Positions 1-57,298 of a stretch of 64,000 nt of DNA are shown one piece after another; the first letter of the stretch is position 1, and the number at the start of each line of letters is the position of its first letter. A program made the translations under genes and the position numbers. The notes under the pieces are model-generated. The model made no database searches. It saw only the letters and a list, made by a program, of their open reading frames with translations, and had not been told where the DNA came from. Source of the stretch: Botryllus schlosseri (taxonomy: Eukaryota); NCBI GenBank assembly GCA_051294905.1, contig CM119383.1, positions 13,206,001-13,270,000 on the forward strand, in the 5' to 3' direction.

Positions 1-3000
1 TCTTCTTTTTACAACTATTTATTTAAGTGCTGTACAAACTTTAATTTGCTACTTCCATATGATGTAATTTTGACATCTCATGGAAATTGATACTTCTACA
101 TGCAACTGTGCATAAATTTGGCTTAATGGCTTAACTTCTGCTTCAGTAGAAACACTGGCTACTTTGACAACCTAAGATTATTTCACAGTTCCAGGCTATC
201 AAACTAAGATACATCACCTAGTTGATCTAGTAGTCTAAAAATAGTTTACCTGTACCGAGTAATCATGCGACACCGGTATTTTGCATGCTTGGTGTATGCC
301 GAATTCTCTCAAAGCGATTGCATTGTTTTTGCACATGGCTCTGAACTTCAGACAGCTGAAATAACACAATTCAATCTTTTAGAAGTAAATACCTGAGATG
401 GATGTAAAGAAAAGATGTACCTGACGGGGCCTCCAATTCCCAATTCATTTTCGGCAGTGTGTATATTAAATTCGTCAACGTGTGACCAACGAATATTACC
501 GACCGCGCTGCACAAGTATATCATTTCTCCACATTTATCAATCAGAGAAGTGCGATTCAAGTATACTCCATCCGTGTCGTTGTAAATCACGCTCCAGACA
601 TCATTCTCCTTTTTATGAAACTGAACCGCAGAGTTGGGAAGATTATATCCAAGATGGAAGTTCCTGCAAGGGCACAAAAAAGTGCTTACACATGGTAGAA
701 ATAACATTTCATAGTTTTTCACCTGGTTGAAATTAACGGATTCATTACAGATCCGACGAAAAATCTGAGACCAATTTGCGAAGCCGGATTTTGTAACTGG
801 GTGCCGTCAAGAGACAAAGCTTCGATCGTTATGGCGAAAGGTATTCTCGTACCAAGGTATATGAAGGGATCATAGAAATTCGCAGAGAATTCAGAGACTT
901 CCAATCGCAATCCAACTGCAACGGCAAGATTTTGACAAAATAAGTCAAACAGTGTGAACTGAAAATAACCTTACTTGGGTTGCAAAGATCAGCAGCGAAT
1001 TCGGTAATGTCGAAAAAGATCTGATTGTTGGTAATTTCATCATTCAATTGGTTAGTCGATTTCAAGGTTGTCTGTTGAACATTTTTTAATCAGTAAACAA
1101 TCACTATTACTACAATGAAAACATTTGAAAGGGCGGTACAGGTCCTATACTTTTCAAAGTCCATATCTTGAGACATGAAATCAATTTAACCAATGCCTCC
1201 AACACTACAATATCCCCCGACTCAAAGATATCCTTATTATTTATCATATAATTGATTGATATACGTGATTTGTCTGCTATATCATATAGTAACTAATTTT
1301 AAACCGATTACACCACATAGTCCAAATAGTTAACTTGTTTCAACGTGCTTTTAAAGTTGAACTAAAAGTGAGGAATTGTGTTGATGCTTGTTGAGATATA
1401 CTTATCTTGTTAATGATGCTTTTGGGCATACAACAATCAAGATATAACCACAGGTAGTCAGTAACAGACTTTGTACTTTTTCAAGGTTATTAATCGTCTA
1501 ATTCCATTGCTTATTCGAGTAATTACACTATCAGACTACTTACACTTCATCAATTTCAAGTAGCCAAGCTTCTGTGTTTCTACGTTTTGAATTGATAAAT
1601 ATATTCATATTGAGAACCCGAATATTTTCGGCTGACACTCGTCAGGCTTAATCGTAAGCAACTAGTTGAGAATTGGAAATTGCATGGTACATCAACAATC
1701 GTATCGTCGGTATGAAGTTTCTTCACCCCAAGTATTCAAAATGTCATGCCGGCGACGTCATATTTGGTGATATGGTTGTTGATATACAATGTTCTTTCCA
1801 ATTCTCTGCTAGTTACTGACGATTACCCCTGACGAGTGTAAGCCGAAAATATCCGGGTTCATTTCAATATGAATATACTTTTCAATTGTATATTGAAGTT
1901 CTGTACCTCTAAGAAGCTCTCCAAAGACGTTTTGAATTTTTGTGAAGTTTTATAACTGAATTTACGATTCTTGTAATAGCAAACCCTTTATGACTGGGAA
2001 GGAAATCACAATGTGTTTCTTCTGACTAATTACTTGAATGCATACCAGACTTCACATTTCCTCTTCTATTTGAGGTAGTTTCAGCATACCATGAAAATAT
2101 CTACCACCTAAATTTGAGTAGAATATAATGGCAATACTTCAACTTGTACTCAAATACCAGCAATAACTATTTTGACCACTTTTGCTAATAACAGACAGCA
2201 GACATGGATTGTTCTACTTCAAATTATTCTCCAGAACTCACCTCAAGCTCTATTCGCACATAAGCGGTACTGGTGCAAACTGAGTTTCTTTGTAGGAGAA
2301 GCGGGATTTTGAAAAACAACCTCATCGGCGTTTTATCACTTGGCGTGTAAAACGGTTCTCTGTAAAAGAATCAAGATCAGAGCTGATTCCAAATATAAAT
2401 GAGAAATGAAAATTTTAATTTACCGAAGCGATGGGTAAGTGTTTGCGGCATCCTTGCCGTTCACCGTGTATATGTGCGTGTAGGATTTTCGATTATTTTT
2501 TGTCAAAGCCAAATTCACTTCAACTGGATAAAATGAAAAATAGAATGGATAAATCAGAAATCTACTGTAACTTAACATCCTAAATCTCACAAAGCCAAGC
2601 ACAGCTCATAATGGAAACTTATATCGTTTGACATCATAAATATGCCTCTAGGAACACTAAAAGTATCCTAAAAAATTGTATCGAACAACACTTCAGTCAA
2701 AATAACATGCAGAGATATGCATATTTCATAATGAAAAATTGATGAAATCTCATTGACGTTATTATTTGCAGCAAAATTCAGTTTAGTAGACACAGGAGTC
2801 ATATTACACTGTATCAATTCTGGAATTGTAATTGGCGGGGGCATTTTAGGTCGTGATCATACCCATATTAATCCCAATCTTCAAAATGCAGCCAACATCA
2901 ACCCTGGCTGGGCACAATTGCAAATAGAATACCTTCTTTAACTTCGGCTATCGCAATATTAATTTTTGAATGAATCCCTAAATCTAAATTCTGATAACAA

Positions 3001-6000
3001 TATTCCGCACACAGGTTGTTTTAGTCGGATTACAATAAATTACATTACAAACGATATGAAGTGCCCACCAACACCAGAAATTCCGGGATTCACGGAAGCT
3101 ATCATTTTAAAACAATTACCGTGCTAGTACCATATTGAAAACACTTTCCGGTGCTTCTCTACTGCTAGCGTACTCAGCAACGTACCTTCATAATTTGTTT
3201 GATCAAACTTCGCCACCCTAGGAATATTACAGTATGGATGCATCACACAAGTCACATTGAACGACAACACAGCATCTGTCGAAACGTCGGCGTACAATTG
3301 TGGCAATAAATGTATCGCGGGATTCGATATTGCGAAGACATCTAAAGCAATTTTGACATCAGTCCTTTTTATTTGAGTCTGTGCAAGAAACTGTGCGTAC
3401 CGTCTGTGCAAGTCCGGAAAACAGGCTGACTCATGAAATTATCTTGCAGATTGCGTTCCATCAGATCATCAGAAAACTAACAAATAGTAACAGAGGTTAG
3501 GAAATATAAGAACAGGTAATTATTAGGTTGTTTTATAATTAGACCACAATGTCATTCCCTTTATGGTCCCGTCATGAATGCCACATATCTATCATTTTTT
3601 CGTACAAGTTTAATTAGTACTGATTTTCAGGTTAGTAAAAAATTAAGCGTTCTAGGTCTACTTTTGCCTAAAAAACTGAAACTTTCAAGAGGAAGTAGTC
3701 TGGAAACATAATCACTTAGGGAAGTAGTGCAAATACGCAAAAACGTGCCTAAAGTGGAAGTAGCAGCACTTTGCCACCGACCACCTCTGGGCGCAAGCCT
3801 AACCATTTACTGGTTTTGCCTTTTGTCACCAGCAGCTAGGTTCGTAGGAGACAGCAATCAGGAATAAAGTTCACTACCCCTGGTCTGTGTAACGGACGTT
3901 TTGGTCGTTGCCTAGCTCAAACGACAGTTCGTTATATTTACTTGATTAGAGTTTTGGCTGTAACAATTTTAGGCTTGTCGAGTAGCTTGCCAACTCGAAT
4001 TGAGACTACCACCTTACTTTCTTTGCTTCCTACAATCCGAGCCTTCCGCTGAGACCCGGTCAAATGTAACTCAACAAATTACAGAATAGGATAACAAATT
4101 TACTACATAGAAAGATCACGTCAACGTCGAGGCAATAGTCACAATAGCGGTTAACAACAGTTAACTCTCTAGGCTCTAGACTTGCAATCTAAACAAAATA
4201 CAATCACCTGAATGATGGCCTAAACTTATACAATACTCACACAATACAAATAATGCCCTAAATGGCACGTTATATCCCTAAATTAAGCCTAACTTCAATC
4301 ACTGATCCAATGATATTACAAGCAACAAAGCGACTAAACTTCAACAAGTGACTACCAAGACACGAGGGGAAAATCCAACCAGAGAGGGCACTACTGAGCT
4401 GTGAGGCTCGCAATCACTTGACCATTTCTCGTGTTACATTCCCCCCCACAGATGTAGGAATTACGAGAATACATCGACTTAACCTAATAGCACGAGATAT
4501 TATCAAGCCAAAGAAAAGTAATTCAAATTACCAATCAACTCATGCCACAATGTCACTATCAATATAGGCCAAATGTTCTTCAAAAGGTTGGTGAGACTTC
4601 AGTAAATCTCTCAAATATATCAACAGTCTTCAAGTAACATTTTCGAACAACCATCTGTTTACTGGCTGTACAATCAACCAAGTACGAACGAAAAACTGGA
4701 ACTCCATGAGGAAAGGTTCCACTCTTCTTCTTTGGGAGACATCGGAGTTCGATCCACATCGCACAATGGCATTCACCATACAATCGATCTTCTTCAAGGT
4801 CTCCAAAGCTGTTTCCGTTTGCACCTCCTTATAAAAGAAGGATAATGACAATATGTCAGTACCAATCCAAATGGCAGCCAACTCCAACATTGATTTGTCC
4901 ATGCTACCAAACCGAGCAAGCTCTTGAAGACAAGGCACATTATAAAGAGATGCTTCTTCATCAAACTCAGTGCTGTCAGAATACCCTTGTGGATCCTTCA
5001 ACAATTGCGATGGAAAATTAGCACTCACATTGCGAATCCCATCGTCACCAGTTATGGAACGAGAGCATGCTTCAATCTTTGAATCCAATGCGCAATCCAT
5101 TGACACCTGTGTCATCAACTTTTCAATATTGGCATCAAGAGAATATCGTTTCTCAAATGTGAATTGATCTCCTGTCACTTCTCTATGCACAAATTGCACA
5201 GGCATCTTTGCTACCTGACCATTACCAGTTGGATCAGGATGGCTTGACTTGTGAAGTATTGATACTTCATCATGCGCATTAGGTGATTCGGTATCACCTT
5301 CAATCTCAGCATCACATGAACAACTTGAGTGTTTACACAACAATGTACGTTCCGGAATATAATTATCAACTCTGTTCACATGGAGAACGTCTTCCGGCTT
5401 ACACTTCAGCGCCTTTCCAATATCAGGAAATTTACTAGACCTAGCACTGTCAAATTTAACCATTGTGGTTCGAGAACATTCTGCGTCCCAGTCCTCAACG
5501 TTTTCATAGTTTCTTTTCAAAATACCAAGGTCCTGAACACAAGTATTTGCATTGATGCAATCTTCAATTGGGTGTGGCGCATTGGCAGGATCGGCGATAA
5601 CATCGACTTCAGTGGAATTGAATACTGCAGCTTCAGAATTACTTGGACATTCCACATCCTGAATTTTCGCATTACATTTGTCTTTGCCTGTCCCATTGAC
5701 AAATACTTGTGCAGTGTTGCCAAGGCCTTTCACAGCAAGTCCAACGAGGGCAGGAGAAACTGGATTCTCTGTATTTACACTGCTTTGCTTCAGAGCAGTA
5801 CTTTGACAAACAGCCATTTCTTCCGTATTCTTTTGCGAGTATGAATGTAGCTTGTGCACGTTAGCTGAGGATTTCCAAATACTTGCTTCAACGCAAGCAA
5901 GTTCAAAGTCTTGCTTCAATCGTAATCGTGATGTTTTACGTTCAATCATTACTTTCTCATCTTCCAAAACTTCGCGATTCAACTGATGAGCCAATTTCAA

Positions 6001-9000
6001 ATGAGCCATTTTCTTTTGGATGATTGCTTCTTTTCTCTTCACGTTTACACTATCATGTATGCTGGCAGAATATGCATTTCCCAATCGCCGAGACATATGA
6101 CGACTGCTTCCAACATAATGCGAACGAGTATGTTTCGATCTTTCTTGCATACATCTCTCCAACTTACTTTGGAATTCATGATAAAATCTCACTTGTTTAT
6201 CATGATCTTTATGACATGCAATCTTTTCTAGATCATCTTCGACTCCGAGGAGGTATAAACTCCAGAGTGTAGAATATTCTTGAAACATACACTGTAGATC
6301 ACTTTGATGTCTCAGAAGATTGATATTCACGTCTTGGGTCGAGATTTCGTGTTCAATGCTTTCATATCTTCTATGCAGTCCGGCCAACTTCTGAATCAAT
6401 TCTTCTTCAGACACACACTTAATTCTTGCCATGGTCATTGTTGTTTTTCATCAGTTACGAATTGGAGAGACGTTGGAAACCTCAGTTGCACATTACCGTT
6501 TTGACTGGCGCGAACTAACTATTTGCTTACCTAGGGCTGGGCCAATCAACAACTCCTGAACTTGCTTCTACTTTCAATTACAACGAGGACAATTTCATGT
6601 ATGGAGGACACTAGCCTCATATGAGAACCTATATCTCATTCAAATGCAAAATACTTCTGCTGAGAACCCTTGGCTTAGCAGTCGAATTTTCTATTGGGAA
6701 CACCAGCCGCAATAGTCTCACAAATTTGTATCAACTGCTACTAAAGCTGATTCTAACAATCAATTCAATGTCAGCTCTTCCAATACAATACTTCTACTAA
6801 CAGTTGTCAAACGGTACAATACCGGTACTCCACTTGCAGCAATTGATATTCAACAATGGCCAAGTCTATACAATAGACCTGGATATATCAAACTGTGGAC
6901 GACCGTTTCTACCAAAAGTTGCCGTTTTGATAGTCTTCAAATTACTTCCGAGATTGTTGTTAACTTAAATGTAACGGACGTTTTGGTCGTTGCCTAGCTC
7001 AAACGACAGTTCGTTATATTTACTTGATTAGAGTTTTGGCTGTAACAATTTTAGGCTTGTCGAGTAGCTTGCCAACTCGAATTGAGACTACCACCTTACT
7101 TTCTTTGCTTCCTACAATCCGAGCCTTCCGCTGAGACCCGGTCAAATGTAACTCAACAAATTACAGAATAGGATAACAAATTTACTACATAGAAAGATCA
7201 CGTCAACGTCGAGGCAATAGTCACAATAGCGGTTAACAACAGTTAACTCTCTAGGCTCTAGACTTACAATCTAAACAAAATACAATCACCTGAATGATGG
7301 CCTAAACTTATACAATACTCACACAATACAAATAATGCCCTAAATGGCACGTTATATCCCTAAATTAAGCCTAACTTCAATCACTGATCCAATGATATTA
7401 CAAGCAACAAAGCGACTAAACTTCAACAAGTGACTACCAAGACACGAGGGGAAAATCCAACCAGAGAGGGCACTACTGAGCTGTGAGGCTCGCAATCACT
7501 TGACCATTTCTCGTGTTACAGTCTGCAAGTCTACATGTGTAACAACTGAGCTGCATATAACATAGCGTAGGAAAATCAATAAGATACGGGGGAAACAAGA
7601 CATCAACAGTATCAAATCGGTATGATTTTTGTTAAAACACAATCAATGCAGCCATCCTTTCAAACTTTATTACCACAACTAAATCGTCAGTGTAATAAAA
7701 TTTGATGATGGAAATATGATTATCCGCAAACTACTTTTTCTCTGTGGTTTCTCATATTCATGCAATGCACAACAATTCAGATCCTATGATTCAGTCATTC
7801 TGTGTTTACGAAAATGCTCAGGATCATCATAAACTAATTTTCTCTTACATAACTTCTGGTTCAAGATGGATTTAATCACTTGGCTAGTCACAGCAGTGCA
7901 GAATGGTTACAAAATCAATCTCTACGCTTTTAGCATTTTATCATCGTTTTTATTCCTACCACTCAGTGGGTGGTTGTTGGGAAGGTGCAACTAGAATGTA
8001 CAATAGAACGTAATGTACAACTAGAAAGAATATCCAAACATTCCAGTGAATAGTGTGCTAAAAAAACACCAGTTCAGGTGGTCCTTTTGGTATATCCTGA
8101 CCAAAAGAGACAGAAAATCAATGGGGAATACCACCATATTTATGGAATTTTAGTTAAGTCAAGTTCATAGAGAAAATATATTTCCAGCGGTTTACATTCC
8201 GACCATTTCCATACCTCTGTAACCAGGAATTTGTAGAAGCATAACACTCTAAAAGTAAGTATATCAACTCTAATCAATACAAATTTATACTCACGCTGAC
8301 AATAATCATCAGGAAGATATCTCCACAGAAACGGTTGTCAGTGGGAGTGGGGAAAGAGTACAGATCTGAGACAATATGGAACCCGGTTTCGCCTTTATTT
8401 ATATTGTCCCCCGATGCATATCCCGACAAGCCAGTGTCCAAGGTGTTGGTAATGTAATTGTCATGGAGAGAATACCAGAATTCGATGCTACATGCAAATA
8501 TTCAATTGATCAATTGAAGTACAAAAATGTTGTAGCAGAGAGCATGCCGCTATGGCCCTCTGGTGACATCAATGAAAATTTTTATTTTGACCCAACCTAT
8601 CAGTATTATTAATTTACAAAAATTAAGTAAGCCAGTGTCTCATGTAGGTTAGCATTCAGCTCAGACGTTTAAATATTCGAGTGAATCTCATTCTGGTTAT
8701 AGCTATAAGAATCGTTTTTACATTAGAGTGTGGTATCTCCAACATATCAGTTCAGTAAAGAGGACAAATCACTACATTTTAAAAACTGATATTCGATTAC
8801 GTTGATAAAACTCCAGTGTATCTAAAAGCGATCATTTATCAATTACCACCAGTAGTTGATAGTAGTAAAATAACGGAACTTGTGAAAAATATTGCTGAAA
8901 TGACAGTTTTGCAACAGAGAAGGTCATTGGTTTGGCTCAATTTAAACAAATATACCATACCAAATATTAATGTTCGTAGCAATCAAAACCCCAAGTGATT

Positions 9001-12000
9001 ACAAAACCTGTTTCAAATATAGACACAACCCCATTTAGTAGAACAATGGTACTCATTACATTATAAATCGTAACACTCTATTATTCTCTAATACCTGTAT
9101 GATGACCGAGAGATTTCAGTGCTATAGGATTGGATAAAAATATCAGCATATACTTCAACCTCTCCTTGAAGAAAATCGGGAACCTTGAAACTGGTCACTC
9201 TCAGATCAGCATCTATGCAAAAGGAATTACTGCAACTTCATGAAGCTAACATTTTGTATATATTTGCTCACCGAGGTTATAATCGTGCACTAATATATCT
9301 GTCAAATCCAATGTCTGCCAGTTATTGTGTAGATTAAAATCCTCCTCGTTGCTACTGGCAGGATAGACCAAGACGTGAAGGAAGACGCGGTCATATTCAT
9401 TAATCTGAATATTGGAAATATTATCACGCAATTTATACACTTTACCCTATCGCTTTTACAATCATTAACATACTCATTCTGTTTTGTTATGAATGTTCCG
9501 GTTGACGAACCAATAAAATCTCTCCCTCTATCTATCTTATTGCAAGCTATGTCATGCGAAATTGTGTATGTTCGAGTTATTACACTCAGCTCCACCAAAT
9601 ACATTACAGGAGATACAGATAACGGCAGGTCAGCAGTTACAAACTATGCTAGCATTTACTGCTTTCGGGAATCACTCATTTAACACCAAATGAATAGGAT
9701 TTTAACGGAAATGCTCATCGCTAGGGCAAGTTTTTGCAACACTTGCCACTTTTTTTAACGCTTCCGGCAGCTTCCTAATTACTAAGAATTTATGTAGTAT
9801 GTTTTAAACTGTTTGTAGGAATTCTATATTGCAACTCATTTCTATTTTTCATGCAAGTTTTTACTGCAACATTTATCAAGTACCGTACTACACGAAATGT
9901 AAAGGAGAGATTTAAAAAAACATACGATAACACAATTTCTAGTGTTGGTCTATTCTATTTGATTTGCATAACCAAGAGCTATGTGATGGATTAGCTGCAT
10001 CTCAATGTTATCAATGGCAAAACAGTTGGCTTGCAAGCTAGAAGTTTAACAACCCCAGTGAAGTACGCCAGTTCCCCAATTAAATTAGAAGTGGACGTAC
10101 GACTTGGCTTTTAGTCAAGCCCGTACAAACGGAATCAGGTCGTGTCTAAACTTTCGAGGTCAAGTTTTGTTAAGGCAGCTTAGTTAGTTAAACTGTGTGT
10201 TTCTGTGCATTCGTTATTTTGCAAGCAAGAAGAGATAACCTTGATATTTGTAAAGATGACGGTCTAAAGCGACGATGTCCAACCTGCAACCCACCTGACA
10301 TTTTTGTGCGATCCTCTAGTCATGGGATCTGTTGGGTTATACAATGGAACCTTTCCGGTATCTCATACCCTAATAATTGCGCATAAATGCAACTTTTTAC
10401 TGCAACTTCTGTTAAAATTAAGTGCAATTTTGCCACAATTTTAGTGCAACAAAACTTGCCTTTCTCACTATGATTTCATTGAGAAATGATCATTCAAGTG
10501 ACTACTTCACTAAAGAGCAGTGATTCTCAAACTTTTTGACCTCGAGGACCTTTTGAAAAGAAAATATAGTTCCGGCACCCTAGGACTTTGAGTCTTTGAG
10601 TACTCTGAGTGGAGCCGATGATTTCAAAAAGGTTAACAACATACATTATACCCACTGTTTATGTTTAGCCCAAGATCCCAGGCGTTGATGTACAAGAATC
10701 ACCTTTGGCCAAGCCTCTATATATCACGGCCTCATTGATGGATATGACTTGTTTTAATAACTAGGCTCCCAAGTCCTACTAATAATTTGGATTTTCTTAA
10801 TTTTTGTTATATATCGACATCAACCCTCTTTACCTGAATGTCTTACGGCACCCCAGTTGAGAACCACTGCACCAGGGATATCTAGATATCCATGCACTGC
10901 ACTAATCACAGTGACAAGTAAATATTTGAAATCGAGCTATTGACACAAGTGTCCATAACACAGGTATCATCTACAACTTCACACAGTAAAAATACACTTA
11001 CTGGAGTTACATATTGTTCTACTACAGTCCCATTGAGTAGAAATAGGACAGAATCCAAGCCAATTTCGTCACCAGGACTTAGAACCTCCGATATCGGCAA
11101 CTTGGTAAATTGCACATCGAATATGACATTGTCTCCTGCTGGAAACTCGGGAAGAATCGAAATATTTGACAATGTGGCCTGAGGAAATAGGAATAATCTG
11201 TTAGCAATCATGTAAGCGATGAGTTTCAATACATGTTAAATTTCAGTAACTTTGTCAGCAGAAACAAACATCTTTAGATGGGGAAATAGCTGTTCAAATA
11301 TTTTACTGTTGAAAGATCTACCTACTCCGTAGCTTCAGACATTTCATATTCTTACATCACTTCATAACAAATCCGTGTCTTACCCAAAATGAAATTTCAG
11401 AGTCCAAGTTTTCAAGGCGACATTTCCCAAGATTTGCGATTGTCAAGTTCAAATTCAGTGAGCTAGAGAAAGTACTGTTGCTGTGAAGAACACCTCCGCC
11501 ATAGGTATTAATATTCAGAGACGCCTTCACAAAACCAAGAACATCTGAAATTTTTAGAATCTGAATTAAAACTATATCTCGCAAAGTATACATCACTAAC
11601 ACAGCTAGGGTATGATGATATAAGCCAACAATGAGATGTTAGAGTAGCAGCAATTGATGAATAAAAGCCCTCATTACTTTGTTCGGCGGGGTATGAATAT
11701 TTCATGAAGCTTTGGTATTTAACACATTGTGCAACAACAGGATATGTCTGATCTAATACATCTGCTTTTTTGGGCTCAAAATGCCATTCAATATGTCATA
11801 GTTAACTGTCAGCTCTCCATTGGTGAGGTTAGGTGTCATTTACCAATGGAAGCAGGTTGAATTTTCTATGGGTCATCAAGTTAATGCACCAGTTATTCTA
11901 TTCACAGTAATTGGTGAATCAACTGTTTAGCATATAGGCCATATAACATAACAGACCAGAAAAGCAAATGAGTGAATAGGGAATTAGGCCAACCCTACAA

Positions 12001-15000
12001 TAGAAATGCTTATTGAATGAAAAATGGAGAATAACAAGCCCAACGACTGTATTCCAGAACACCTTGGCATTGTAATATAAATGACTGAGATCCTGGTTAG
12101 TTCCAATAGGACTTCACTCCATATAGACCCAAGTTTGCTACACTAGAATTATACACTACAGTGAAACTATCAATGTCAATGAAATCACACCTCCATCACA
12201 CAGCAAACTCCCATTTTCAAGTATCACATATTCTTGGATTAGAACATCAAGTTCGTCAGGACACAGAGAACCCGGCATAAGTTTTGATATAAAATCCTCG
12301 TCTGGTGTCAAAAGCGATTTACTCCAAATGACTAAATCCGGTGATGCATCAGGGTATGGAAATGAATCGTCGGAGCATGGAAATGAATACAGATCTTGTC
12401 TTTCCAAGGCAAAACTCCACATGTTGAGATCAGATATTGTCCATTCCGAAAGACCCTGGTCTTTTAATACTATGAAATCATTGGCTGTAATAAAAATAGA
12501 TAACATAGTTCATAGTTTGCTCATAATAAAGATGTAATTATAAATAGGTGTGTTTTTCCGCTGATCAATTGCATGAATTTGAAATGAAATTGCTTTCGAA
12601 GTTATTTGATTTCCGGCAGTACAGCAATCCTCATCATAAACTCAATCACTTATAATTGATATTCATTCTAGTGCATGGTCATTGGTCAATCATCCCAATG
12701 ATCGTCGATGAAAGCTTTAATTAACATATGTGTTAAATTGCAAACAATACCTTACTATACACAGGATGTACAAATTTTTGATTAGTCTTCGAGATATGAA
12801 TAGCATAGAGAAACTGTGGGTCATGCATAGGATTTTTAACATTGCACGGCTCACCTTCTCATTAGGAATTAATTACAGTGATATCGAGACATGGTAATAA
12901 AATTAGGCATCGGATTAGACACAACCGTGCATACCTGAAGGGAAATCGGTCATAGCGAAAAACATCAATGTATCGAATGAATGAACCAGCATATGCATAT
13001 TTCATTAATTCTAATGTTATCTTGGACCTCCTCTTGTGGCCCACTTGAGCTTAGTAAAAATATTGCAGACGAAGCTAGAATAAGGCTCATTTCACACTGC
13101 TCCATATTGGCATTTCTTCATGGGATTCACAAATTTCTCTAGGGGCAGCATTTCGCCCATGTGCCACAGCTTGCTTGCCCTGACTTAATACATGTCTTTT
13201 TATCTATTTTTATTGAAATGAATGCAGCAATATTAAATGACCTCAGCATAATGCCAGACTGATATACCAAATCATTTGAGGAAATTCACAATACCTGGCC
13301 ATTGAAAGGAATTCAGTTCCATGTAGGTTTGTTTGTCGCGGTTTTTATAGATGGCTAAATGAGAGTCCGCCATTATCACACAAATGGCCATCCATGTTGT
13401 GTAAGGAATTAATAATCTTTTATTTTCCGGTGCAACAATCACTGTCAAGCTTGGAACCTACAAAGTATCAAAGTGTATATGAAGATATAAATGTCCTTCC
13501 AGTCTTATGCAACAATAAGTGACAAACTAAGATCAAACTGTGTATCCAATAATTGAAACGAAGGTAGTAGGCTACTTCCCACGCAGAACTGAAGATGTAT
13601 GTTAAAGTTAGGTGATGATTTTTCTCGGAACTGTAGAAATAATTTATTATCAATGTAATATAACTATTCGAAACTTCCAGTTTACAGTAGACGAATGCAT
13701 AACACATTACCAATATAAATTGGCACTTCTTTTATAGTTTTTATGAACTGCTGGAAAAATTTTATCCCCATTTAATTTTAGGTCGTTTCAGGCACTGTTA
13801 AAGATTTTCACTCATCTCAATCAATCACCATTCCATTAAGCTATGAAGATATTCATTTTTAAATTACTTCCAGTCCTGGTTCAACTTTGATCACAAAAGT
13901 TCCACTGGCATCCGTCAAGATAGTCTGCTCCGTCAAAACCGAGGTGAATTGAATGTAGAAGCAAATTGTCCAACTCCAAGAAGGAAAACTTGAAATCTGC
14001 CGAAGTTTCACGTCTTTCTCGGGAGATATCTGGATAGGATCAAATGGAAATATATCATGAGATTTTATCACATCCATTGCATTCAGTAAGAACTACTATG
14101 TTGTCGCAAAGACCTACATTCATAGTGTTACGCTAGTCGATTGTAATTTAGATTTATGTACACACTTTTGACAGATTTGTAAACAAGGTTGACCATAATA
14201 CAGGTAGAATGAAGAGTCACTGTTCATTGATATAAAAAAACCATGATCATATATTATGTATTATGATAGAAAGACTATTGCACAAAGCAACTAACACATT
14301 CAAAGACGATATTCACAAGGTTAACAGAAGTCCATTCAGGATTTTTCACAAATTTATCAATAATGATCAACCTAGTATCACTTCAATCGATACCTTGAAC
14401 GGAAGCTACAGTAACAGCTCACTTGAAATTGGGCTCTTGGCACATGTCTTACAGTAGTACGAAATTGGCCTTTCCCACAGCAATTCTCATTTCCTTTGTC
14501 AAATTTGCCTCTTCCATATACTACAATGGTGTCGGCAGTGTCTTCGCACAGACCATTTGTCCGTGATTGCAACGCCTTGTATAAAAAGCAAGTAATTCAT
14601 TGAAACAATTACAATATTTACAATATTTGTGCTCATGCTTTGCTATAATCTCCTACCAGGGTTTTAACCAAGTCACAAGGCTCCGAGTCACAAGTCAATC
14701 TCACTTTTATATTTTTGACTCGAGTCAAGTCGAGTCATTTTCAATTCCCACCGAGTCAAGTCCGAGTCCAAGTCAGCGAACAGAGGATCGAGTCCGAGTC
14801 ATGGTATTATGACTCGAGTCCGAGTCCAAGTCATTGTGTTTTGACTGCTCAGTTTCCAGTTAAAGTCTTCCTAAACCCACTTTTTTAACTCTGTTTGGTG
14901 ATATTGAATGGTTCGCATTTATAATATATCAATTTTCCTCACTTTTAGCAGTTTCTGGTCGCATTTTCAAGCACCAGTGCCACCAAACGAAATCCCAATA

Positions 15001-18000
15001 GTGTGTTGGCTTCGAAATTACAATGAAATGTCGATCTTAGCCGTCTGAATCTCAAGTCAATGACTTGCTTCGAGTCATGCGAAATGACTCGAGTCCAAGT
15101 CGAGTCAATACACTGATTGACTCGAGTCGAGTCGAGTCATTTCCGTATTTTGAGAAAATGACTCGAGTCGAGTCGAGTCATCTGAAAATCGTGACTCGAG
15201 TCATGACAACCCTGTCTCCTACATTATGAATATTATTCATCAACATTGCTTTAAGTCAGTGTTGGGATGACTCGAGTCATGACTTGACTCGAGTCAGACT
15301 CGAGTCACCTTTTTCGTATGACTTGACTTGACTCGAGTCACTTTGCTAAAATGACTTGACTTGACTTGACTCGGCGTATCAAAAATGTGGATTGACTCGT
15401 GACTCGGAGCAAAATTCACGAGTCAATTTCAAGTCATCAAGTAATCGGTGTCGATAAAAATCATTGTATCTTGCATATGGTCGGGTTGCTCGCGAAACGC
15501 TCGTGTAACCCGTGAGAGCGACTAATCATTCAATGATCGTGCGTTTCACTGTGCCTCCATTGTTCTTTCCCAAATAAATTGACCGCAAACGAAGTGATCG
15601 AAGCTTATAGCTTACGATGTCGTAAACTAGTATAGTAAAGTAATTTAATAGTAAAATGTGTATTTCTGCTTGCTGTTCTTACCTTAACCTAACGTCTTGG
15701 TTAATTGAAATTGAATTCGAATATAGTTTATATAGTCATCAACCATTGGCGCAGGCTCGAATGTATATTGCTTCTTATCAATTCGTTTCTCTATTATCTA
15801 TTTTGGCTGGTAACTATAAACTGAGGCTATGCAATTACTTACGTAGTTTAGCAGTTCTACGTATATGTGAGCGATACAGCGCCTTCTTGCGTGTATATTT
15901 AACTCTATATTCGTTCATTGGTTCAGAATCGATGACCACTCAATCTGTATCCCAGACAGTCAGCAAAATGCAATAACATAATCATGCCTCGTACTTCGAA
16001 AAGCCAACTTGACTTGAATTGTGACTTAACTCGTGACTTGACTTGACTTGACTCGACTTGACTCGAGTCAACTCCAAAAATCGAGTGACTTGACTTGACT
16101 CGAGTCACCTTCGAAAATCGATTGACTTGACTTGACTCGAGTCAAAATGTGCAATGACTCGAAATGACTCGTGACTCGAAGGTAGTGACTTGATCCCAAC
16201 ACTGCTTTAAGCTAGCAAGCAAAGCACCATACGACAACAATAAGAGTTTAACATCCATTTTCAGTAAATCTGTAGTCACAAACTCGCATTTGAACTTAAC
16301 ATTTTTCAATTTTATCTTTTATCTCACTTTTATCATCACATATTAATTTTTACAGCCTAAAGTGTTGGTCGGTGACGAACTAGCCTACTTTGAAATTTTT
16401 CTGAGTAATCAAGTGGATTTCGTCTACTTCCATTACGTAAATGGTTACCGTATGTTATGCGCTGCTTCTACTTCTGCTTCAACAGTTTTTAAAGTGGAAC
16501 TACGTTCTTTTCACAGTTTAGATTTTTTGAGGTGTTTGGTAGTATATGGATACATCTACAACACTTTCATGGGTGAAATTTTTTTTTGGCAACTGGACGA
16601 TGCCGAACCTCTTTGACTGCAACTGATTTAATTTCAAAAATTGCTGGTATGTTGAATGGCATTAGTTATTCTGTGTACGTCACTCAGTTACAACTGGTCC
16701 TTGAAATTTGCTAACAGAAGTCCGGGAGGGCATTCCCATCAAACAACTTACTTGAGTTATTTTCATAGCGTGGTCTTTCGAACCCCTCGAAAATTGCTAC
16801 TTCTACTTGCCATTGAGTAGGAATTGACGGCATTAGGCCTACTTCTACCTATACATGTACAATATTGTCAACGATTTTGACCGTCTATGGTTAATTACAT
16901 GAGTACAATAAAATACAGAGTAGGCTGTTTAGTCAATTTGATGCTATACTGACTAATAATAGCGACCAAGTTTTGCATTGTTTGTTACAAGAAATTAAAA
17001 ATTGATAAACACGCAAGTGAAAAGACGGTGTCCAGTCTCACAGCGAGACATACATATCGTAAACGTGTATTTGCGGCACCGAACCTACCGAGCGACTGCA
17101 TGTTCCTGTTGTAAAGGTAAGATCCATTTCAACGGGTATGTTATGGTAAATCGTGTTTGGAAACTTCCAAAGTGTGGACTTCGTCGTAAACATAACGTTT
17201 TCCGATATATGATTGGGATTTTCGATGGCTTGTCCTTCCTCCAGGTGGCGTCTCGACACCGCATTCGCAAGCTTACTCTGGTCGGTCGCAATAGTGGTTT
17301 GGCCTGTGCAAAACAAACCTACTTAATACTTATCAGAGACGCCAGGCAGAGCAGTGCGGGTAATTACGACCGTGCCCGTCACCTCCGTAGAATCACAGAT
17401 AACTTCACGCAAGTTTAGGCTTCGGTACAGCGACTCATACATGGCGCGTAGCAAATAATTAGTACGGCCTTCACGCCGTACACGGAACGATATTTGGTAT
17501 GGTACGAAACCTGACGATTCGCCAAGTACCAAATTACTATATTTTTACAATACCTTACTTTTTCATGCATTTTGCCGCGGAATATGACATGTCAATCAGT
17601 ATCATGATGCAGTTGTGTTGCATATATGATAGCAATTACCAATCGAGCAATGTCCTCTACTACATTGCGAACTGCTAAACCACTGAATCCTGGCCATGTC
17701 TCGCCGAAACGATCAATGTGATGATCGATAAGCGCCAGATATTCAATGTTCAATATATACTAATAACATTAATTCTATGCTATGCCACTCTATTCCCACT
17801 CTATTATCTTATTCTACATCTCATAGTAATTAGTAAAACGCCGCCAGAGACAACAAAGAAATGCCGCAGCAGTGTACTTTTCTCTGACTGCTTCTGGCCT
17901 CGAAAGACAGTGTAGCGTAGCCTATGTCAAGCAATCAACATGTCTTCTTTGACACGATCCATGCTTTTTTAATACCATCAACTGATAGGCGTAACCAGAA

Positions 18001-21000
18001 CACAAAAAATGCAGGAAGAGATTTTTTAACACTATAATTTCAGTTTCATGTCCATACTCCATATCGTCATTTCGTACCATGCCGTACTTGACGAATCATA
18101 CCCAATATCGTGTGCCGAAATAATCGTTCACTAGTACTACGCTACCGTAGTTCAAATAGCGAAGTGATGCCAGTTACAGGTGATTCGCAACAATCTCATA
18201 CTTCTGGCCCAAAACTTATTTCGTAGCGCTTTGTCACCATTGTGCTAATAGAGTTTATCATTACTTGACAGAAAGACCGCACCATGAATATTCGTACTCT
18301 GCAACAACATGTTTTGCGATGCTGAAGTATGGCCTGGCCAATGGCCACTGTTTCGGTATTTAATTGTAGGGGAAAAAATCGGAACTACATTTTTCGCTGA
18401 CAAAATATTTCTCTTACTGTGAAGGCGAACATTTTCGGCACTCGAAGAAACCGAGCATCACTTATACCACTCCCAGTCGAGTACTAGAATCTACAACTAC
18501 TATGAGTTCCCGCACGTGACATTTATATATCCACTATCCAGCCATAGTAGCTCTAACCTGAAGTCTCGCAAACAATCATGGCAATTCCGTCGACACACGA
18601 AGTGCCGAACCACACGGCTTCGTCGCTCATCATGATACAGCTCTCGGCAAGATCGCTATTATAAACTAAAGTGGACGGAAAGTATTCAAGTCGTTTTCCA
18701 GAATCAGACACCCGGGACCATCCAGAAATCTTCGCATCACCGCGTCCCCCAATCCATATAAAATCCACTGTTGAAGAAAAGTGTTATCGTACAGAGAGTT
18801 ATAGGAATGAAACCGCTGTGTAATTGTATAATGTATTTCAAATGACTTCTCGACGAGTTCGAGGCAGAGAATGAATTTTTCATAATTATCAGCCTATATT
18901 ATGCTATGCGATGCTGCGTTTTATTGACCGCAGCTGTTGAGTTGCGGTAATTAGGCCTAGTTCCTTCATAACATCAGCCGATAACCAGGGTTGCATTTAA
19001 AAGAAAAATCTATTTAAAACAAACCTGTTTAAAACATGTGTTTTACTGTTTTTTAAGCCATGACGTCACGAATATTCAATTGAGATAGTGGATTGACACG
19101 AAGAAATGAAAATATAGGGTAAATTTAGCGTCTTTGACGAAATATCTGCGTAGGCCCTACTATAGCTGTTGAACCGACTATTTTGGGGGTTCCAACTACC
19201 CCATGTCGTATATATACGTCGACTATATCCGGTGGTAATCGTCCTTAGGCTCATACAACACGTTTTTTCAAAGTATTTACACAATTATGGCGCGATTATA
19301 CAACCTAAAAAAACACAATTTTTCGTACCGTTCATTTTTCTCATATATCTGTGAATTGATTTCATATGTGTCTCAGAACGCGGTTCAAGCATGCGAGATC
19401 CCAATCGTTGGCAGGTTTCCACGGCGGTGGAGAAGGAAGAATAGTATCGCTTATTTTCGGTTGCGGTCACAATGACCTGACTGGATCCGAGGGGAGTCCA
19501 TTCTGCGATAACATAAAATATTATTATTCATTAGGTGTGTTACAATTTGATCAATGCACGAAGGTGCTGGGGATGGATATCGATGCTAATCAAGTGGGAT
19601 GTAAGTAAAAGTGGTGATTTGCTACGAATTCTAATAATTGTATTAACTAGGCCTACCATATGTCGTCTTTTGGGAGTATTTGTCGTCTTTTAATAAAAAT
19701 AATAAATGGTCCTCGGAGGACGCCCAAATGTCCTACTTTTCGTGTTGATTGTTTTTACTTACGACCAGATGAGGTAAGACGCCCACGATCAACACGACAG
19801 AACAAAGCAAGTAGTTTCGCAATCATCGCCTAATAATGAGACGAAACTGTCACATTGATTTCCACACACGAATGAAGATTTGTAACGTTTTATGATAATT
19901 GAAGACTTTTACACATATTGTTACTGAAATACGGCCTTTTACAACCAAGTGAAATATCATATTTAACGGATGTTAGAAAGAGTTTTCCAGTCTATTCATG
20001 ATTTTACTGCGCCTAGTTGGATTTAAGTCACAGTCGAAAGGCGAATTCACGCAATAACCACTTGGTAAGTGATTCACAAACAATGGCGACCTCGAGAGTA
20101 AAACGCCTACCCCATTTATGGGTTCATCAAGAATGGCTTCTCGGAGAACGCCATTTCTATTAAAAGTGCGATTCTGCCGACAAATATAGGCTATGGCTAT
20201 CCCCCGACTAAACACAATGAATTTTATAAACTTTCGGCTCTATGTTTTGACTTATCATAATCAGTTGGTGTTTATGGATGATTTCCATGATGAGGGGGAG
20301 AAAATGTATAGGGTTGTGTACGGAATAAATAATTATCGGTTACTGAGTGGCAAGCGGTATTTAGTAGGGTATAACGGGCTAAAACGCCAATGGAGGCGTT
20401 TTTCCCCAGCCATGCAGCAAAACTTCAAATTGATGGACAGTTGATTGACAATTTTACAAGATAATTGATACTTGGACCTTTCAGATTATTGTGGTAGAGT
20501 GTGAACGATATCTCGCGTGCAAATTCTGAAATTAAGCCCGTTTCGACCAGTTTGGTGGGTGTTATGACATTTCCCGCCTATGGTAGGCGTTTTGCCCTGC
20601 TCTTACCCTATCGTTTAAACAATTTTATTATAGTGATTATTCCTTACTGGCAAAAGTTGAGGGAACCGTAAAGTCTTCATGGGTTGAATCTACAAAATAT
20701 AGTTTATCGTGTATGATTTGTAACTTTTTATTTGCTTTGTCTTTGTAACTTTTGCCTGCAACTACCAAGGACATGTACCGTGGCGAGATAGCGCAGTGGT
20801 ATAATCCGCGGCTACAACACCACTGGATGCGGGTTCGAGTCCGACCGAAGTCGGAGGTTAGAGGTTTACCTAGGCTCCTCCTCAGCACCTCATCCGCGTC
20901 AGCGGTGTCTTACAAAAGCCTAGAGGTGGGCCGTGCTATAAGTCGGCAGCTACGGAAGAATATCGGCCTGGTGTAAATGACCATAATAGTCGACAAACAC

Positions 21001-28149: not shown

Positions 28150-30410
28150 TTAGGCTCGTATTAAGCGTCTCCAACGTAGGCGGTCGTGGGCGTCTTCAAG
28201 CGACAGCCCGCGTTGCGCTAGGTCAGTCTCCATGGTCGAGCGCCATGTTTTCCGATTCAAGCCACCTCTGCGCCATGGCTCCGTGGGAATGTGATTGATG
28301 ATGGCGGCGGCTGGTTGCTCGTCTTGATGCCGCACTAGATGGCCGATTAGGCGGAAGCGTCGTTCAGCTGCCAGTAGACGGCATGGGACCGTTCCTGTGA
28401 GTTCTCGCAATGCATTCGTGTATATTAGGGTTACCATATTTTTGTGGAACAAATTCCGGACACTCTTTGGCGCCCACTAGCGGATTATAAAATGAGGTAT
28501 AACAAATTGTCCGACAACATGACGTCACACTAGCAAAGCATTGCCTATCGACTGTATACAGGAATGGAAAGGGATATAGGACATAGGTCATGGATTGGGT
28601 CATCTGTAATGTGAGCTCTGGTGATTGCTACTTGCTAGGGTCTGCCAATGATATATATATATCATTGGGGTCTGCAATAGATTCCTCCACGGGCCGGATG
28701 AAATAGTCTGGCGGGCCGTGTGTGGCCTGTCAGGATTGTGTTTGACAGCCCTGCTATACTGTTAGGTCGGTGCGGCTATCTGTTTATGTGTTTTAATCAG
28801 GTTCGAAACATATATTTTTTCTGTCCCCTTCCGTCCAAACAAGCACTGATCTTTGACCTACCACATAGTCGATGTAACTTGTGGCGCACTTACCATATGC
28901 ATTTGGCTGTTAAATTTTATGTATGAATTATGTCAATAATATTGAATTTTCCATAGATTTGGCTACTATAAAATGCACCAGCAGGTTGCACATCCGGTGA
29001 TTTCCTACCTTTTATGGTCGTGACCTCATTTCTCGCTTAAAAATGTTCAGTGGCAAAGCTAAACACTTCATAAGCTGATTACCAAAAAAATTCAGCTTGC
29101 CCACACTTACTCACGGCCTAGAAAGCTGAGTACGTCCAACATCATCGCGATCCCCAGATAAAGGCGAACGACGCCAAGATTTGGAAACACTGTCTGTGAC
29201 TGAAGCATCCAATCGGCCTTGACCAACTCTACGAATATACCGTTAGCTTATAATTGAGATTACAATCAGACTTATTCAGTAAATGATGGTTATTTATATT
29301 TATTTTGATTGCATTTTTGGCGAGGGTGGTGCCTGGTGCCCGTACTAATATCATTATACGTTGCATTGACTCGCGCGCGGCGCGATGAACAATTTTGAAT
29401 AGCATAAATCTGCTTGAAAATAATATTGTTTGTGTTGATTTACGAAAAACTTTTAGAGCCTGCTTCAAGCCTTCAAAATTCCGGACATTTGGGCATATTT
29501 TAGAAATTCCTCCCGGACGCAGATTTTTCAGTGAAATTCCGGACATGTCCGGGAAATTCCGGACGTATGGCAACCCTAGTGTATATATATGCTCCGGATG
29601 GTGAATGCCGAGTGCATAGCGGAGGAGTGCGTCGTGGTTAGCGTTGAGCGTCTTAGCCAGCTTCTCTGTCAGCGTGAGTGCCTCTATTCCGTAGAGAAGA
29701 ACCTGTTCGACAGTGGCACGAAGATACGGGTCTGGAGCTGGGTTGAGGCACTTGAATGGACGAGGCTATGTAGCCGTCTTGCCGCGCCCCAGGCCTTTGC
29801 TCGCCTCGCCTTGAGCGCTTTTCCAGAGTCAGCGACGTCAATACCGAGGTACACAAAACTCGTTACATACTTGAGATCGATTTCTCCCAGTTGAATCGGT
29901 GTCGCGTTCTTCGGTAGAGCTGGTATGGCCAGAACCTCAGTCTTCTTGGCGTTGATCTGGAGGCCAACAAGAGCGGCGGCGGCCTCTAGCTGGTTAATGA
30001 GGCGCTGTACCGATGCGGTGTTCGGGGCAAGCAAGGCTAGGTCGTCTGCGTAGGCAAGAATACCTACGTGTATTGCCTCGCGAGTCGTTCGTGTGTCAGT
30101 GTAGAGGGCCATGATGGCGTACGTCATCACCTCAGGAATTCCATAGAATCTGAGGATCTCCGCCATGGCTGGGCGCGAGACCGAGTCGAAGGCATTCGCG
30201 AAATCTACGGAGACGGCCACAACATTCTTTTTGTGTGAGCGACAGGTGTCAATGATTGTGCGCAGTACCAGGATGTGCTCTGTAGTACCGTGAGATGGTC
30301 GAAATCCATTCTGAGCATTCAGGAGCTTGGTAGAGAGTTGCTCACGTATGCGAAGGAGCAATACTCGGTCGAACAATTTGGCAGCGGTCTGCATCAGGGG
30401 AACTGCCGGC
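28150..30410 (-). pseudogene. Decayed RTE-like LINE reverse transcriptase, interrupted by a hAT insertion
   Basis: QNGFRP, VDFANAFDSV, YADD and FVYLG motifs, and C-terminal GHLVRH...WRRGG...TW...DRLRWR. The GVxQG region is deleted and there is a frameshift. Confidence 0.9.
28426..29578. mobile_element. hAT MITE inserted in the LINE
   Basis: TIR TAGGGTTACCATA/TATGGCAACCCTA, exact TSD GTGTATAT. Removing it restores HPEHIYTNALRELTG. Confidence 0.9.
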
Positions 30411-56147: not shown

Positions 56148-56261
56148 TTAAGAGTAGCAGCAGTTTTTTGCTTCCCGCTTCATTGGTGTGAATGGGACCG
56201 TCAGCGTTTTCGCTGATCGATCAAAATATTGCTGCGATCAAAACATTGTTGACTGACTGAC

Positions 56262-57030
56262 TGACATTATGGCTGAGGTGTGTTCGGCCTGTGTTGTCAT
56301 TCGTACATGGTATCTGGGGTGTGTTCGGACTGTGTTTACACCCGGACATCGTGTCTGGGGTGTGTTCCGCCGGTGCTGCCATTCGAACATGGTGTCTGAG
56401 GTGTGTTCGGCCTGTGTTGCCATTCAGACATGGTGTCTGGGGTGTGTTGACACTCGGACATCGTGTCTGAGGCGTGTTCGGACATCATGTCTGGGGTGTG
56501 TTCGGCCGGTGCTGCTATTCGGACATGGTGTCGGCGGTGTGTTGGGACTGTGTTGACAGTCGGACATCGTGTTTGGGGCGTGTTTGGACATCATGTCTGG
56601 GGTGTGTTCGGCCGGTGCTGCTATTCGGTCATGGTGTCTGAGGTGTGTTCGGACTGTGTTGACAGTCGGACATGTGTCTGGGGAATGTTCGGACATCATG
56701 TATGGAGTGTGTTCGGCATGTGCTGCCATTCGGACATGGTGTCCGAGGTGTGTTCAGCCTGTTTTGCCATTCAGACATGGTGTCTGGGGTGTGTTGACAC
56801 TTGGACATCGTGTCTGGGGCGTGTTCGGACATCATGTCTGGGGTGTGTTTGGCCTGTGCTGTCATTCGAATATGGTGTCTGGGGTGTGTTCGGGCATCGT
56901 GTATGGGGTGTGTTCGGCATGTGCTGCCATCCAACATGTGTCTGGGGTGTGTTCGGACTGTGTTGACATTCGAACATCTTGTCTGGGGCGTCTTCGGACA
57001 TCATGTCTGGGATGTGTTTGGACTGGGTTA
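56262..57030. repeat. Composite minisatellite of 24-bp and 17-bp TCGG-initiated monomers
   Basis: TCGGACATCRTGTCTGGGGTGTGT (24 bp) interleaved with TCGGCCTGTGCTGCCAT or TCGGACTGTGTTGACAG (17 bp). Confidence 0.9.
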
Positions 57031-57065
57031 CCGCTGGGATATCGTGCCTTGGATATGTTGATACT

Positions 57066-57185
57066 GCAACTGACCTTATTTGATTTCAAAAATGAGACTG
57101 ACCTTATTTCAAACATGACTATCCTCATTTCAAACATGAGACTGACCTTATTTCAAACAAATCTGACCTTATTTCAAACAAATCG
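57066..57185. repeat. Short tandem array of ~20-24 bp CTGACCTTATTTCAAAC units
   Basis: About 5 copies visible. Confidence 0.8.
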
Positions 57186-57298
57186 AACCAACCCTCCTCA
57201 ATATACCAACATATCTGGTGTCGTGATTGCCGACCATCTCATATGAATTGACAATGATAATACATCTTTTCCTTTCCACACTGTTGCATATTTTTCAG

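What the first reader, a model, noticed from the sequence alone, without database searches (positions are those of the whole stretch)
250..11544. Tandem CARDB-like Ig folds in an intron-rich animal gene
Seen: at least five divergent units share end motifs (FCGDIFLMIIV; TCGYILIV..NDEITNN; KCGEMIYLCSAV; VCTSTAYVRIELE..ETTSN; VFLHVLVY..NEEDFNLHNN) and start/middle motifs (DADLRVTSF, GLRLEVSEF; SIEFWYS, GLRFFVG). Known: CARDB is mainly a bacterial/archaeal surface-adhesion fold with DL.V, F.LS.D and E.NE.NN motifs. Inference: either an old horizontally acquired module that has gained many introns, or a poorly described animal Ig-like family.
Basis: partly seen in the sequence, partly recalled or inferred. 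Interest (0 to 1): 0.7.

Follow-up and report, generated by a model that had tools for sequence, protein, structure and literature searches.

The report
Orphan-module sea-squirt gene, weak CARDB link
The stretch holds exons of a real, spliced, single-copy animal gene for an acidic protein made of very divergent modules of about 100-145 residues.

Summary
The quoted motifs are all present on the minus strand. A spliced transcript contig joins six exons (12362-8295) through GT..AG introns into one open frame of 318 codons, so the intron-rich gene is real.

- **Repeat claim:** weak. The modules do not align to each other above shuffled controls, and all-against-all phmmer of the exons finds no internal repeats. 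One short motif, C-G-acidic/Tyr-Ile/Met/Leu at the last long strand, does recur: 5 times on the gene strand against 0, 1 and 1 in controls.
- **CARDB claim:** spliced units U2, U3 and U5 hit no Pfam family convincingly. They score about 0 bits on a CARDB profile, and hhalign gives 0.2-3%.
- **The exception:** It is the best CARDB match in the whole 495-Mb genome, at E 0.9.
- **Fold:** both AlphaFold models failed (pLDDT 33 and 40), so the fold is not established.
- **Distribution:** the gene is single-copy. Its only relatives are three ORFs from one related sequencing sample.
- **Horizontal transfer:** nothing supports a recent event.
- **Also in the stretch:** a recent LTR-type element fills 3888-7522.

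The scan has not noted this gene before on other DNA.

The parts
12191..12362 (-). Exon a. It holds the start motif SPDLVIW of the first visible unit. The transcript contig begins here, so the true 5' exon edge is unknown.
   Evidence: Spliced contig of run X1; open frame.
11383..11544 (-). Exon b, the second half of unit U1 (..LNLNLTIANLGK..SEISFW).
   Evidence: Junction with 'cut +1' ambiguity.
11002..11177 (-). Exon c, the first half of unit U2 (ATLSNISILPEF..). It is preceded by a phase-1 intron.
9272..9404 (-). Exon d, the end of unit U2 (VFLHVLVY..NEEDFNLHNN) plus linker.
9095..9212 (-). Exon e, the start of unit U3 (DADLRVTSF..). A phase-1 intron of 59 nt precedes it.
8295..8487 (-). 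Exon f, the middle and last strand of U3 (SIEFWYS .. FCGDIFLMIIV).
3186..3476 (-). Exon g, the acidic tail of U3 (DDLMERNLQDN) and the start of the next unit. The start is fixed by 30 transcript letters and the end is predicted. The frame switches inside it: the first frame closes at 3371 and the second opens at 3438.
   Evidence: Loose end of the contig; reading; frame continuity into exon h.
2242..2357 (-). Predicted exon h (..VCTSTAYVRIELE).
   Evidence: AG/GT sites and frame continuity with exon g. No RNA was laid here.
1432..1475 (-). Tentative exon piece with TCGYILIV. The acceptor is uncertain.
975..1071 (-). Predicted exon j, a unit tail (..NQLNDEITNN..) ending at a phase-1 intron.
723..915 (-). 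Predicted exon, the first half of unit U5 (GLRLEVSEF .. GLRFFVG).
   Evidence: Splice sites and open joined frame; related-species ORF P0002 covers it.
421..663 (-). Predicted exon, the second half of U5 (..KCGEMIYLCSAV..VDEFNIHTAENELG..).
   Evidence: ORFs P0001 (78% identity) and P0002 (44%).
3888..7522 (.). Inserted LTR-type mobile element inside the intron between exons f and g. Its terminal direct repeats of about 553 nt lie at 3888-4440 and 6970-7522 and are about 99% alike. It carries a 602-codon ORF at 4630-6438 on the minus strand. It is not part of the gene.

Best explanation
The stretch is part of one large, single-copy, spliced gene on the minus strand of an animal genome. Other agents of this scan call the genome a sea squirt. 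The gene encodes an acidic protein, probably extracellular, built from a chain of very divergent modules of about 100-145 residues.

Each module visible here begins with a short strand-like segment, often (P/A)DLxV-like. It ends with a long hydrophobic strand, often introduced by Cys-Gly, followed by an Asp/Asn/Glu-rich tail. Module starts sit at phase-1 introns, the usual signature of modules multiplied by exon duplication in animal extracellular proteins.

The modules belong to no recognised Pfam family. One module 14 kb downstream keeps a near-canonical CARDB C-terminal signature, so the array may descend from, or converge on, a CARDB-type beta-sandwich.

The inferred mode of action is a rod of tandem sandwich modules in a secreted or surface adhesion or matrix protein, with acidic inter-module tails that could bind calcium and stiffen the chain. 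What is shown: splicing, the open frame, single copy and homologous ORFs in one related sample. What is inferred: the fold, the location and calcium binding.
For: - **Transcript:** a spliced contig with six GT..AG junctions and a 318-codon open frame.
- **Strand asymmetry:** long minus-strand open frames continue downstream (886, 443, 428, 289 and 288 codons), while the plus strand has none over 147 codons between about -45 kb and +13 kb.
- **Copy number:** single copy in the genome.
- **Related ORFs:** 78% and 73% identity in one related sample.
- **Intron phase:** phase-1 introns at the starts of U2, U3 and U5.
- **Recurrent motif:** the CG-acidic/Tyr-I/M/L motif occurs 5 times against 0/1/1 in controls.
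- **Composition:** D+E is 12-15% against K+R 4-8%. N-glycosylation sequons exceed the shuffled expectation in the two largest of the six pieces tested: 14 against 8.5 and 8 against 3.5.
- **CARDB link:** unit Uc scores 20.5-20.6 bits on CARDB, E 5e-4, 19.7 bits on an independent bacterial profile and 66% by hhalign.
- **Neighbours:** TSP1, cEGF/EGF_CA and weak NIDO exons lie on the same strand further downstream.
Against: - No statistically significant similarity between modules.
- No Pfam family for U2, U3 or U5.
- The CARDB hit of Uc is below Pfam's cut-off and has a genome-wide E of 0.9.
- Both structure models are unusable (pLDDT 33 and 40), so even 'beta-sandwich' rests on sequence pattern only.
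- The language-model search gives low recognition and no neighbours.
- Continuity of the gene from the window to Uc and the large downstream exons is inferred, not shown by RNA.
- No signal peptide or membrane anchor was located.
- Expression is low: three deep RNA runs gave 0-4 reads.
- Exon g shows a frame switch that could mean a broken allele.
Confidence: 0.6

Rival explanations
1. The modules are true, very diverged CARDB (E-set) domains throughout. The whole array is a eukaryotic CARDB expansion, inherited vertically from an old eukaryotic or early animal stock.
For: - Uc has a near-threshold CARDB signature.
- That hit is the genome's top CARDB candidate and falls within the same roughly 60-kb gene region. 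This would happen by chance about 1 time in 10,000.
- The C-terminal 25 residues of U3 align in register with Uc (CGD..L....D/S..N/D..E..N..N) on reading.
- The best local hhalign matches of U2, U3 and U5 all map their N-termini to CARDB positions 2-29.
Against: - Those hhalign probabilities are only 0.2-3%.
- A C-terminal sub-profile finds no other unit: only Uc among all exons scores above 6 bits.
- The tail of U5 is not conserved in the 44%-identical related ORF.
- The N-terminal register argument is partly circular, because the units were cut at DL-like motifs.
Confidence: 0.3
2. The units are a lineage-specific orphan module, or an ordinary metazoan Ig-like or fn3-like module diverged beyond recognition. 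They are unrelated to CARDB, and Uc's match is a chance or convergent Asp/Asn/Glu-rich loop.
For: - The genome-wide E of the Uc hit is 0.9.
- The score is carried almost wholly by about 27 residues.
- No other unit scores.
- Ascidian genes evolve fast, and the only relatives are at 44-78% identity in one sample.
Against: No metazoan Ig-like family matches either, even at E<=10.
Confidence: 0.35
3. The CARDB-like module entered the ascidian lineage by horizontal transfer from a prokaryote. It then gained introns and multiplied.
For: CARDB is mainly prokaryotic: it was found in 26 of 151 Bacteroidota genomes and in 5 of the 14 control genomes, bacterial and archaeal. No other CARDB match exists in this genome, and the second candidate is a Calx-beta-like gene. 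From general knowledge, tunicates hold known bacterial acquisitions such as cellulose synthase.
Against: - There is no sequence close enough to any prokaryotic domain for a tree; the best is a 20-bit partial match.
- Canonical introns, including phase-1 module boundaries.
- Composition is like the surrounding DNA.
- Neighbouring exons on the same strand are typical animal modules.
Confidence: 0.05
4. This copy is a decaying or polymorphic pseudogene. The frame break in exon g, the fresh LTR-type insertion in the adjacent intron and the very low expression reflect loss of function.
For: - The frame switches between 3438 and 3372.
- The LTR-type element has about 99% identical ends.
- There are 0-4 reads in three deep RNA runs.
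Against: - Six upstream junctions are spliced cleanly and the frame is open.
- The frame break can be resolved by a 44-nt GT..AG intron (3422..3379) or a one-base assembly error.
- The downstream exons keep very long open frames.
- The related ORF is 73% identical with no stops over 406 residues.
Confidence: 0.1

Closest known systems
CARDB domain (Pfam PF07705, E-set clan), as in archaeal and bacterial surface proteins
   Same: The unit length is about 100 residues. There is a (P/A)DLxV-like start in several units. A long penultimate strand begins at a Gly and is followed by an acidic/Asn tail. In unit Uc the tail D-x-N-N-x-x-E-E-x-D-E-x-N-N matches the family signature D..N...E..E.NN, with 20.5 bits on the Pfam model.
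   Different: The score is below the curated cut-off. A Cys precedes the Gly, which is not a CARDB feature. The units are split by 1-2 introns each. The host is an animal. No structure is available to compare.
Tandem-module extracellular proteins of animals assembled by exon duplication (phase 1-1 modules: fn3, Ig, EGF, TSP1 arrays)
   Same: Module boundaries fall at phase-1 introns. The gene is very long and has many exons. TSP1 and calcium-binding EGF exons lie on the same strand downstream. The composition is acidic and rich in sequons.
   Different: The modules match none of the named animal families. Internal introns cut the modules as well. It is not shown that the TSP1/EGF part belongs to the same transcript.
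Giant uncharacterised secreted mosaic proteins noted elsewhere in this genome by the scan (TSR, EGF/VWD giants)
   Same: Same genome, same style: huge genes with many exons and a presumably extracellular product, unstudied.
   Different: Those are built of recognised modules with annotated orthologues in other ascidians. This one is built of unrecognised modules, and nothing was found outside one related sample.

Membership tests
CARDB (PF07705) | The Pfam model score reaches the gathering cut-off of 22.7 bits | tested here: not met
   U2 and U3 had no hit at E<=10 and U5 had no CARDB hit. Uc scored 20.5-20.6 bits, E 5e-4, over profile positions 65-99 only. The genome-wide six-frame best is 18.3 bits, E 0.9.
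CARDB (PF07705) | C-terminal signature G.Y.l.v.vD..N.v.E.nE.NN | tested here: inconclusive
It is present almost perfectly in Uc. A sub-profile of this block scores only Uc at 19.1 bits.
CARDB (PF07705) | N-terminal PDLxV strand followed by the v.v.v.N.G strand | tested here: inconclusive
   Look-alikes can be read in the sequence (SPDLVIW, DADLRV, LTIANLGK). The N-terminal sub-profile gives nothing above 6 bits, and the plus strand scores as high.
CARDB (PF07705) | Seven-stranded Ig-like beta-sandwich fold superposable on solved CARDB domains | tested here: inconclusive
   The AlphaFold2 models of U3 (pLDDT 39.8) and of the 428-residue exon (pLDDT 33.3) are too poor for a fold search. The alignments had only 1-2 sequences.
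Tandem repeat array of one domain family | The units align to each other above chance | tested here: not met
   Smith-Waterman against shuffles gives a best p of 0.07. phmmer of the units and all-against-all of the exons give no pairs. Only a 6-residue motif is enriched.
Ordinary metazoan Ig-like families (fn3, I-set/C2, cadherin, Calx-beta, PKD, integrin calf/DUF11) | A match of any such Pfam model | tested here: not met
   No such family appears at E<=10 for spliced U2, U3, U5 or Uc, nor at E<=0.1 to 1 for about 45 single exons.
Horizontally acquired gene | Closest relatives are prokaryotic, with anomalous composition or missing introns | tested here: not met
   A search of 1.84 billion representatives with one exon found only two eukaryote-style ORFs from one sample and one spurious bacterial repeat protein. 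Introns are canonical. GC is 35-41% over the gene part of the window (1-14 kb), within the window's overall 35-46%.

The most novel reading that the evidence does not exclude
The array is a tunicate-specific expansion of a prokaryotic CARDB surface-adhesion module. It would have been captured by horizontal transfer, as tunicate cellulose synthase was, then cut by introns, multiplied by phase-1 exon duplication and diverged until only one copy still shows the family signature.
Probability: 0.05. Interest if true: 0.7.

Novelty: new variant of a known kind. Interest (0 to 1): 0.3.

Why it matters
If the modules are a new or CARDB-derived sandwich family, this gene would add a building block to the set of animal extracellular modules. 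It would also be a further case of fast, lineage-restricted invention in tunicates. As it stands, it is one more large, unstudied, weakly expressed ascidian gene of unknown role. The main practical value of this check is negative. Motif-level resemblance to CARDB read by eye in five units does not survive profile tests, and only one unseen unit gives a borderline signal.

Tried and rejected
- **Pfam:** scans of single exons and of spliced units gave nothing but the Uc/CARDB borderline hit and a 13-15-bit DUF6701 match.
- **ESM Atlas feature search:** two exons gave no usable hit and low recognition.
- **Homologue searches:** the exhaustive phmmer search of 1.84 billion representatives with exon 351-806 gave two Logan ORFs plus a spurious bacterial repeat protein. 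The word-indexed search found one ORF for the 428-codon exon, none for the 886-codon exon and none for the Uc exon.
- **Structure:** both AlphaFold2 jobs gave pLDDT under 40. No fold search was run, because it would be meaningless.
- **PDB:** a sequence search with the Uc exon gave nothing.
- **C-type lectin idea:** my first impression of C-type-lectin pieces at 18553-18768 and at -16.3 to -18 kb got no Pfam support and is dropped.
- **Second CARDB candidate:** the genome-wide candidate on contig C5 reads, by eye, as a Calx-beta-type gene (no Pfam scan was run) and is unrelated.
- **Literature:** one full-text search for 'CARDB domain' with 'metazoa' found nothing on animal CARDB arrays.
- **ETTSN:** this motif could not be placed in an exon.
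Full report
**Where and what.** The window is G000:C13:13206001-13270000 of a 495.5-Mb animal assembly. Notes by other agents of this scan call the genome a sea squirt; I did not test that. Everything of interest lies on the minus strand.

**The gene is real and spliced.**
- One run of the same species (X1, Logan contigs) holds a 1250-nt contig that lies on 12362-12191, 11544-11383, 11177-11002, 9404-9272, 9212-9095 and 8487-8295.
- It skips 646, 205, 1597, 59 and 607 nt. Every skipped piece is CT..AC on the plus strand, which is GT..AG on the minus strand.
- Joined, these exons give one open frame of 318 codons.
- The next 30 contig letters match from 3476, so the following intron runs from 8294 to 3477.
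- Three deep RNA runs, read to 6-13%, gave only 0-4 reads, so expression is low or restricted.
- One exon differs from the contig at 6 of 172 positions, which suggests a polymorphic species.

**Units.** Reading the transcript-supported protein gives the following modules.
- U1 runs from SPDLVIW to SEISFW, about 104 residues.
- U2 runs from ATLSNIS to the NEEDFNLHNN tail, about 103 residues.
- U3 runs from DADLRV through SIEFWYS and FCGDIFLMIIV to DDLMERNLQDN, about 120 residues.
- Downstream, splice sites and frame continuity give exon g (3476-3186), exon h (2357-2242), a tentative piece with TCGYILIV, exon j (1071-975) and the two exons of U5 (915-723 and 663-421). The U5 exons join in one open frame.
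- ORFs P0001 and P0002 from a related sample cover U5.
- The starts of U2, U3 and U5 fall at phase-1 introns, and exon j ends in phase 1. By the established rule for animal extracellular modules (phase 1-1 exon duplication, Patthy), this supports autonomous modules.
- Other introns cut within the modules.

**Are the units repeats?**
- Statistically, hardly. phmmer of U2 and U3 against all six-frame segments of 164 kb returns only their own exons, and the plus strand gives noise as high as the minus strand.
- Smith-Waterman scores between U2, U3, U5 and Uc, each against 500 shuffles, give a best p of 0.07.
- All-against-all phmmer of 260 minus-strand segments gives no pairs apart from interspersed repeats.
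- One short pattern is enriched: CG[DEY][IML]x[ILFYVM] at the start of the last long strand. It occurs 5 times on the gene strand between -45 kb and +13 kb, 0 times on the opposite strand there, and 1+1 times in the other 106 kb. It was defined from the data, so it counts as modest support.

**CARDB test.**
- The Pfam CARDB model searched over the whole genome in six frames gives two candidates. The best scores 18.3 bits, E 0.9, over profile positions 73-99. It lies at C13:13191517-13191597, which is window -14483 to -14403, on the same strand and 14.8 kb downstream of U5.
- On its own that E-value is compatible with chance. However, a random top hit would fall within this roughly 60-kb gene region only about once in 10,000 trials.
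- Scanned alone, the exon scores 20.6 bits, E 5e-4. Spliced to its upstream exon (unit Uc, -14119 to -14318 plus -14384 to -14492) it scores 20.5 bits on profile positions 65-99. This is below the 22.7-bit cut-off.
- I built an independent CARDB profile from 27 non-redundant domains fetched from Bacteroidota genomes. It gives Uc 19.7 bits but U2 -0.5 and U3 0.1 bits.
- Sub-profiles of the N- and C-terminal blocks find no other exon of the gene above noise.
- hhalign against the bacterial alignment gives Uc 66%, U2 3%, U3 1.5%, U5 0.2%, and 0.7% for U5 aligned with its two relatives.
- In the 44%-identical related ORF, the acidic residues of U5's tail are replaced.
- Pfam at E<=10 gives no other family for the spliced units. 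No fn3, Ig, cadherin, Calx-beta or PKD model matches.
One neighbouring unit is a borderline CARDB.

**Fold.** AlphaFold2 on the 428-codon exon, with its single relative in the alignment, gave pLDDT 33. On spliced U3 alone it gave pLDDT 40. Both models are strand-rich but unusable, so no fold search was made. The fold is therefore not established.

**Extent and context.**
- Minus-strand open frames of 886, 443, 428, 289 and 288 codons lie between -11 and -44 kb. The plus strand has none over 147 codons between about -45 kb and +13 kb. None of them has a Pfam match.
- Further downstream on the same strand come TSP1, a weak NIDO match, and cEGF/EGF_CA exons (-47 to -66 kb). A separate rhodopsin-type receptor gene follows at -73.8 kb.
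- Whether all of this is one transcript is not shown.
- The tested pieces are acidic. The two largest of the six carry more N-glycosylation sequons than shuffles, which fits an extracellular product.
- The gene is single-copy.
- Its only relatives among billions of proteins are three ORFs from one sample: 78%, 73% and 44% identity.

**Frame problem.** Exon g opens in the only open frame at 3476. That frame closes at 3371, while the frame that continues correctly into exon h opens at 3438. Three readings are possible: a 44-nt GT..AG intron (3422..3379, with a good acceptor and a weak donor), a one-base assembly error, or a broken allele. I could not tell which.

**Insert.** Positions 3888-7522 are an LTR-type element with ends of about 553 nt that are about 99% alike. 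It carries a 602-codon ORF with no Pfam match. At least 13 copies with intact ORFs (91-98% identity) and many more repeat ends are scattered over the genome.

**Verdict.** The finding is a real, expressed, lineage-restricted modular gene. The modules are of unassigned family. CARDB ancestry is possible, with one borderline unit, but it is unsupported for the listed units. Horizontal transfer is unsupported. The interest is modest.

Noticed in passing
window 3888-7522: An LTR-type mobile element sits inside the gene's intron. It has terminal direct repeats of about 553 nt (about 99% alike, beginning TG) and one 602-codon ORF (4630-6438, minus) with no Pfam family. The genome holds at least 13 further copies with intact ORFs at 91-98% identity, and at least 157 repeat-end candidates. 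The first roughly 210 residues are 32-35% like the start of 1092-1912-codon ORFs elsewhere, which may be the autonomous partners. Described only.
   Followed up: partly
window 3438-3372 (inside exon 3476-3186, minus): The reading frame switches inside a transcript-supported exon. It could be a 44-nt intron (3422..3379), a one-base assembly error or a broken allele.
   Followed up: partly
G000:C13 about 13140000-13160000 (window -46 to -66 kb), loci L006-L008, minus strand: Exons with TSP1, weak NIDO, a VWD-looking piece without Pfam support, and several cEGF/EGF_CA modules. They are either the 3' part of the same giant gene (a MUC4/SNED1-like tail) or a neighbouring matrix gene.
   Followed up: partly
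L009:6185-6949 (window -73815 to -73051), minus strand: A rhodopsin-family receptor ORF (7tm_1, E 1.5e-13; one open frame of 255 codons covers profile positions 39-260 of 260) lies downstream on the same strand.
   Followed up: no
window 29684-30394 (minus) and 56250-57250: A reverse-transcriptase-like ORF of 236 codons, judged by eye. A block near 56-57 kb has overlapping long ORFs on both strands made of a repeated unit of about 20 codons (..VWGVFG..), probably a minisatellite.
   Followed up: no
L046:4979-6693 (G000:C5:26275979-26277693), minus strand: The genome's second-best CARDB candidate (15.7 bits) reads, by eye, as part of a gene with Calx-beta-type repeats. It is unrelated to this finding.
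   Followed up: partly
window 15926-16141 and -22042 to -21821 (minus): A short interspersed repeat is shared between two introns or flanks of the gene region (phmmer E 1e-12). Related Ser/Val/Thr-rich pieces (..SSQV..SHF..) recur at 14600-15200 and 61850-62340.
   Followed up: no
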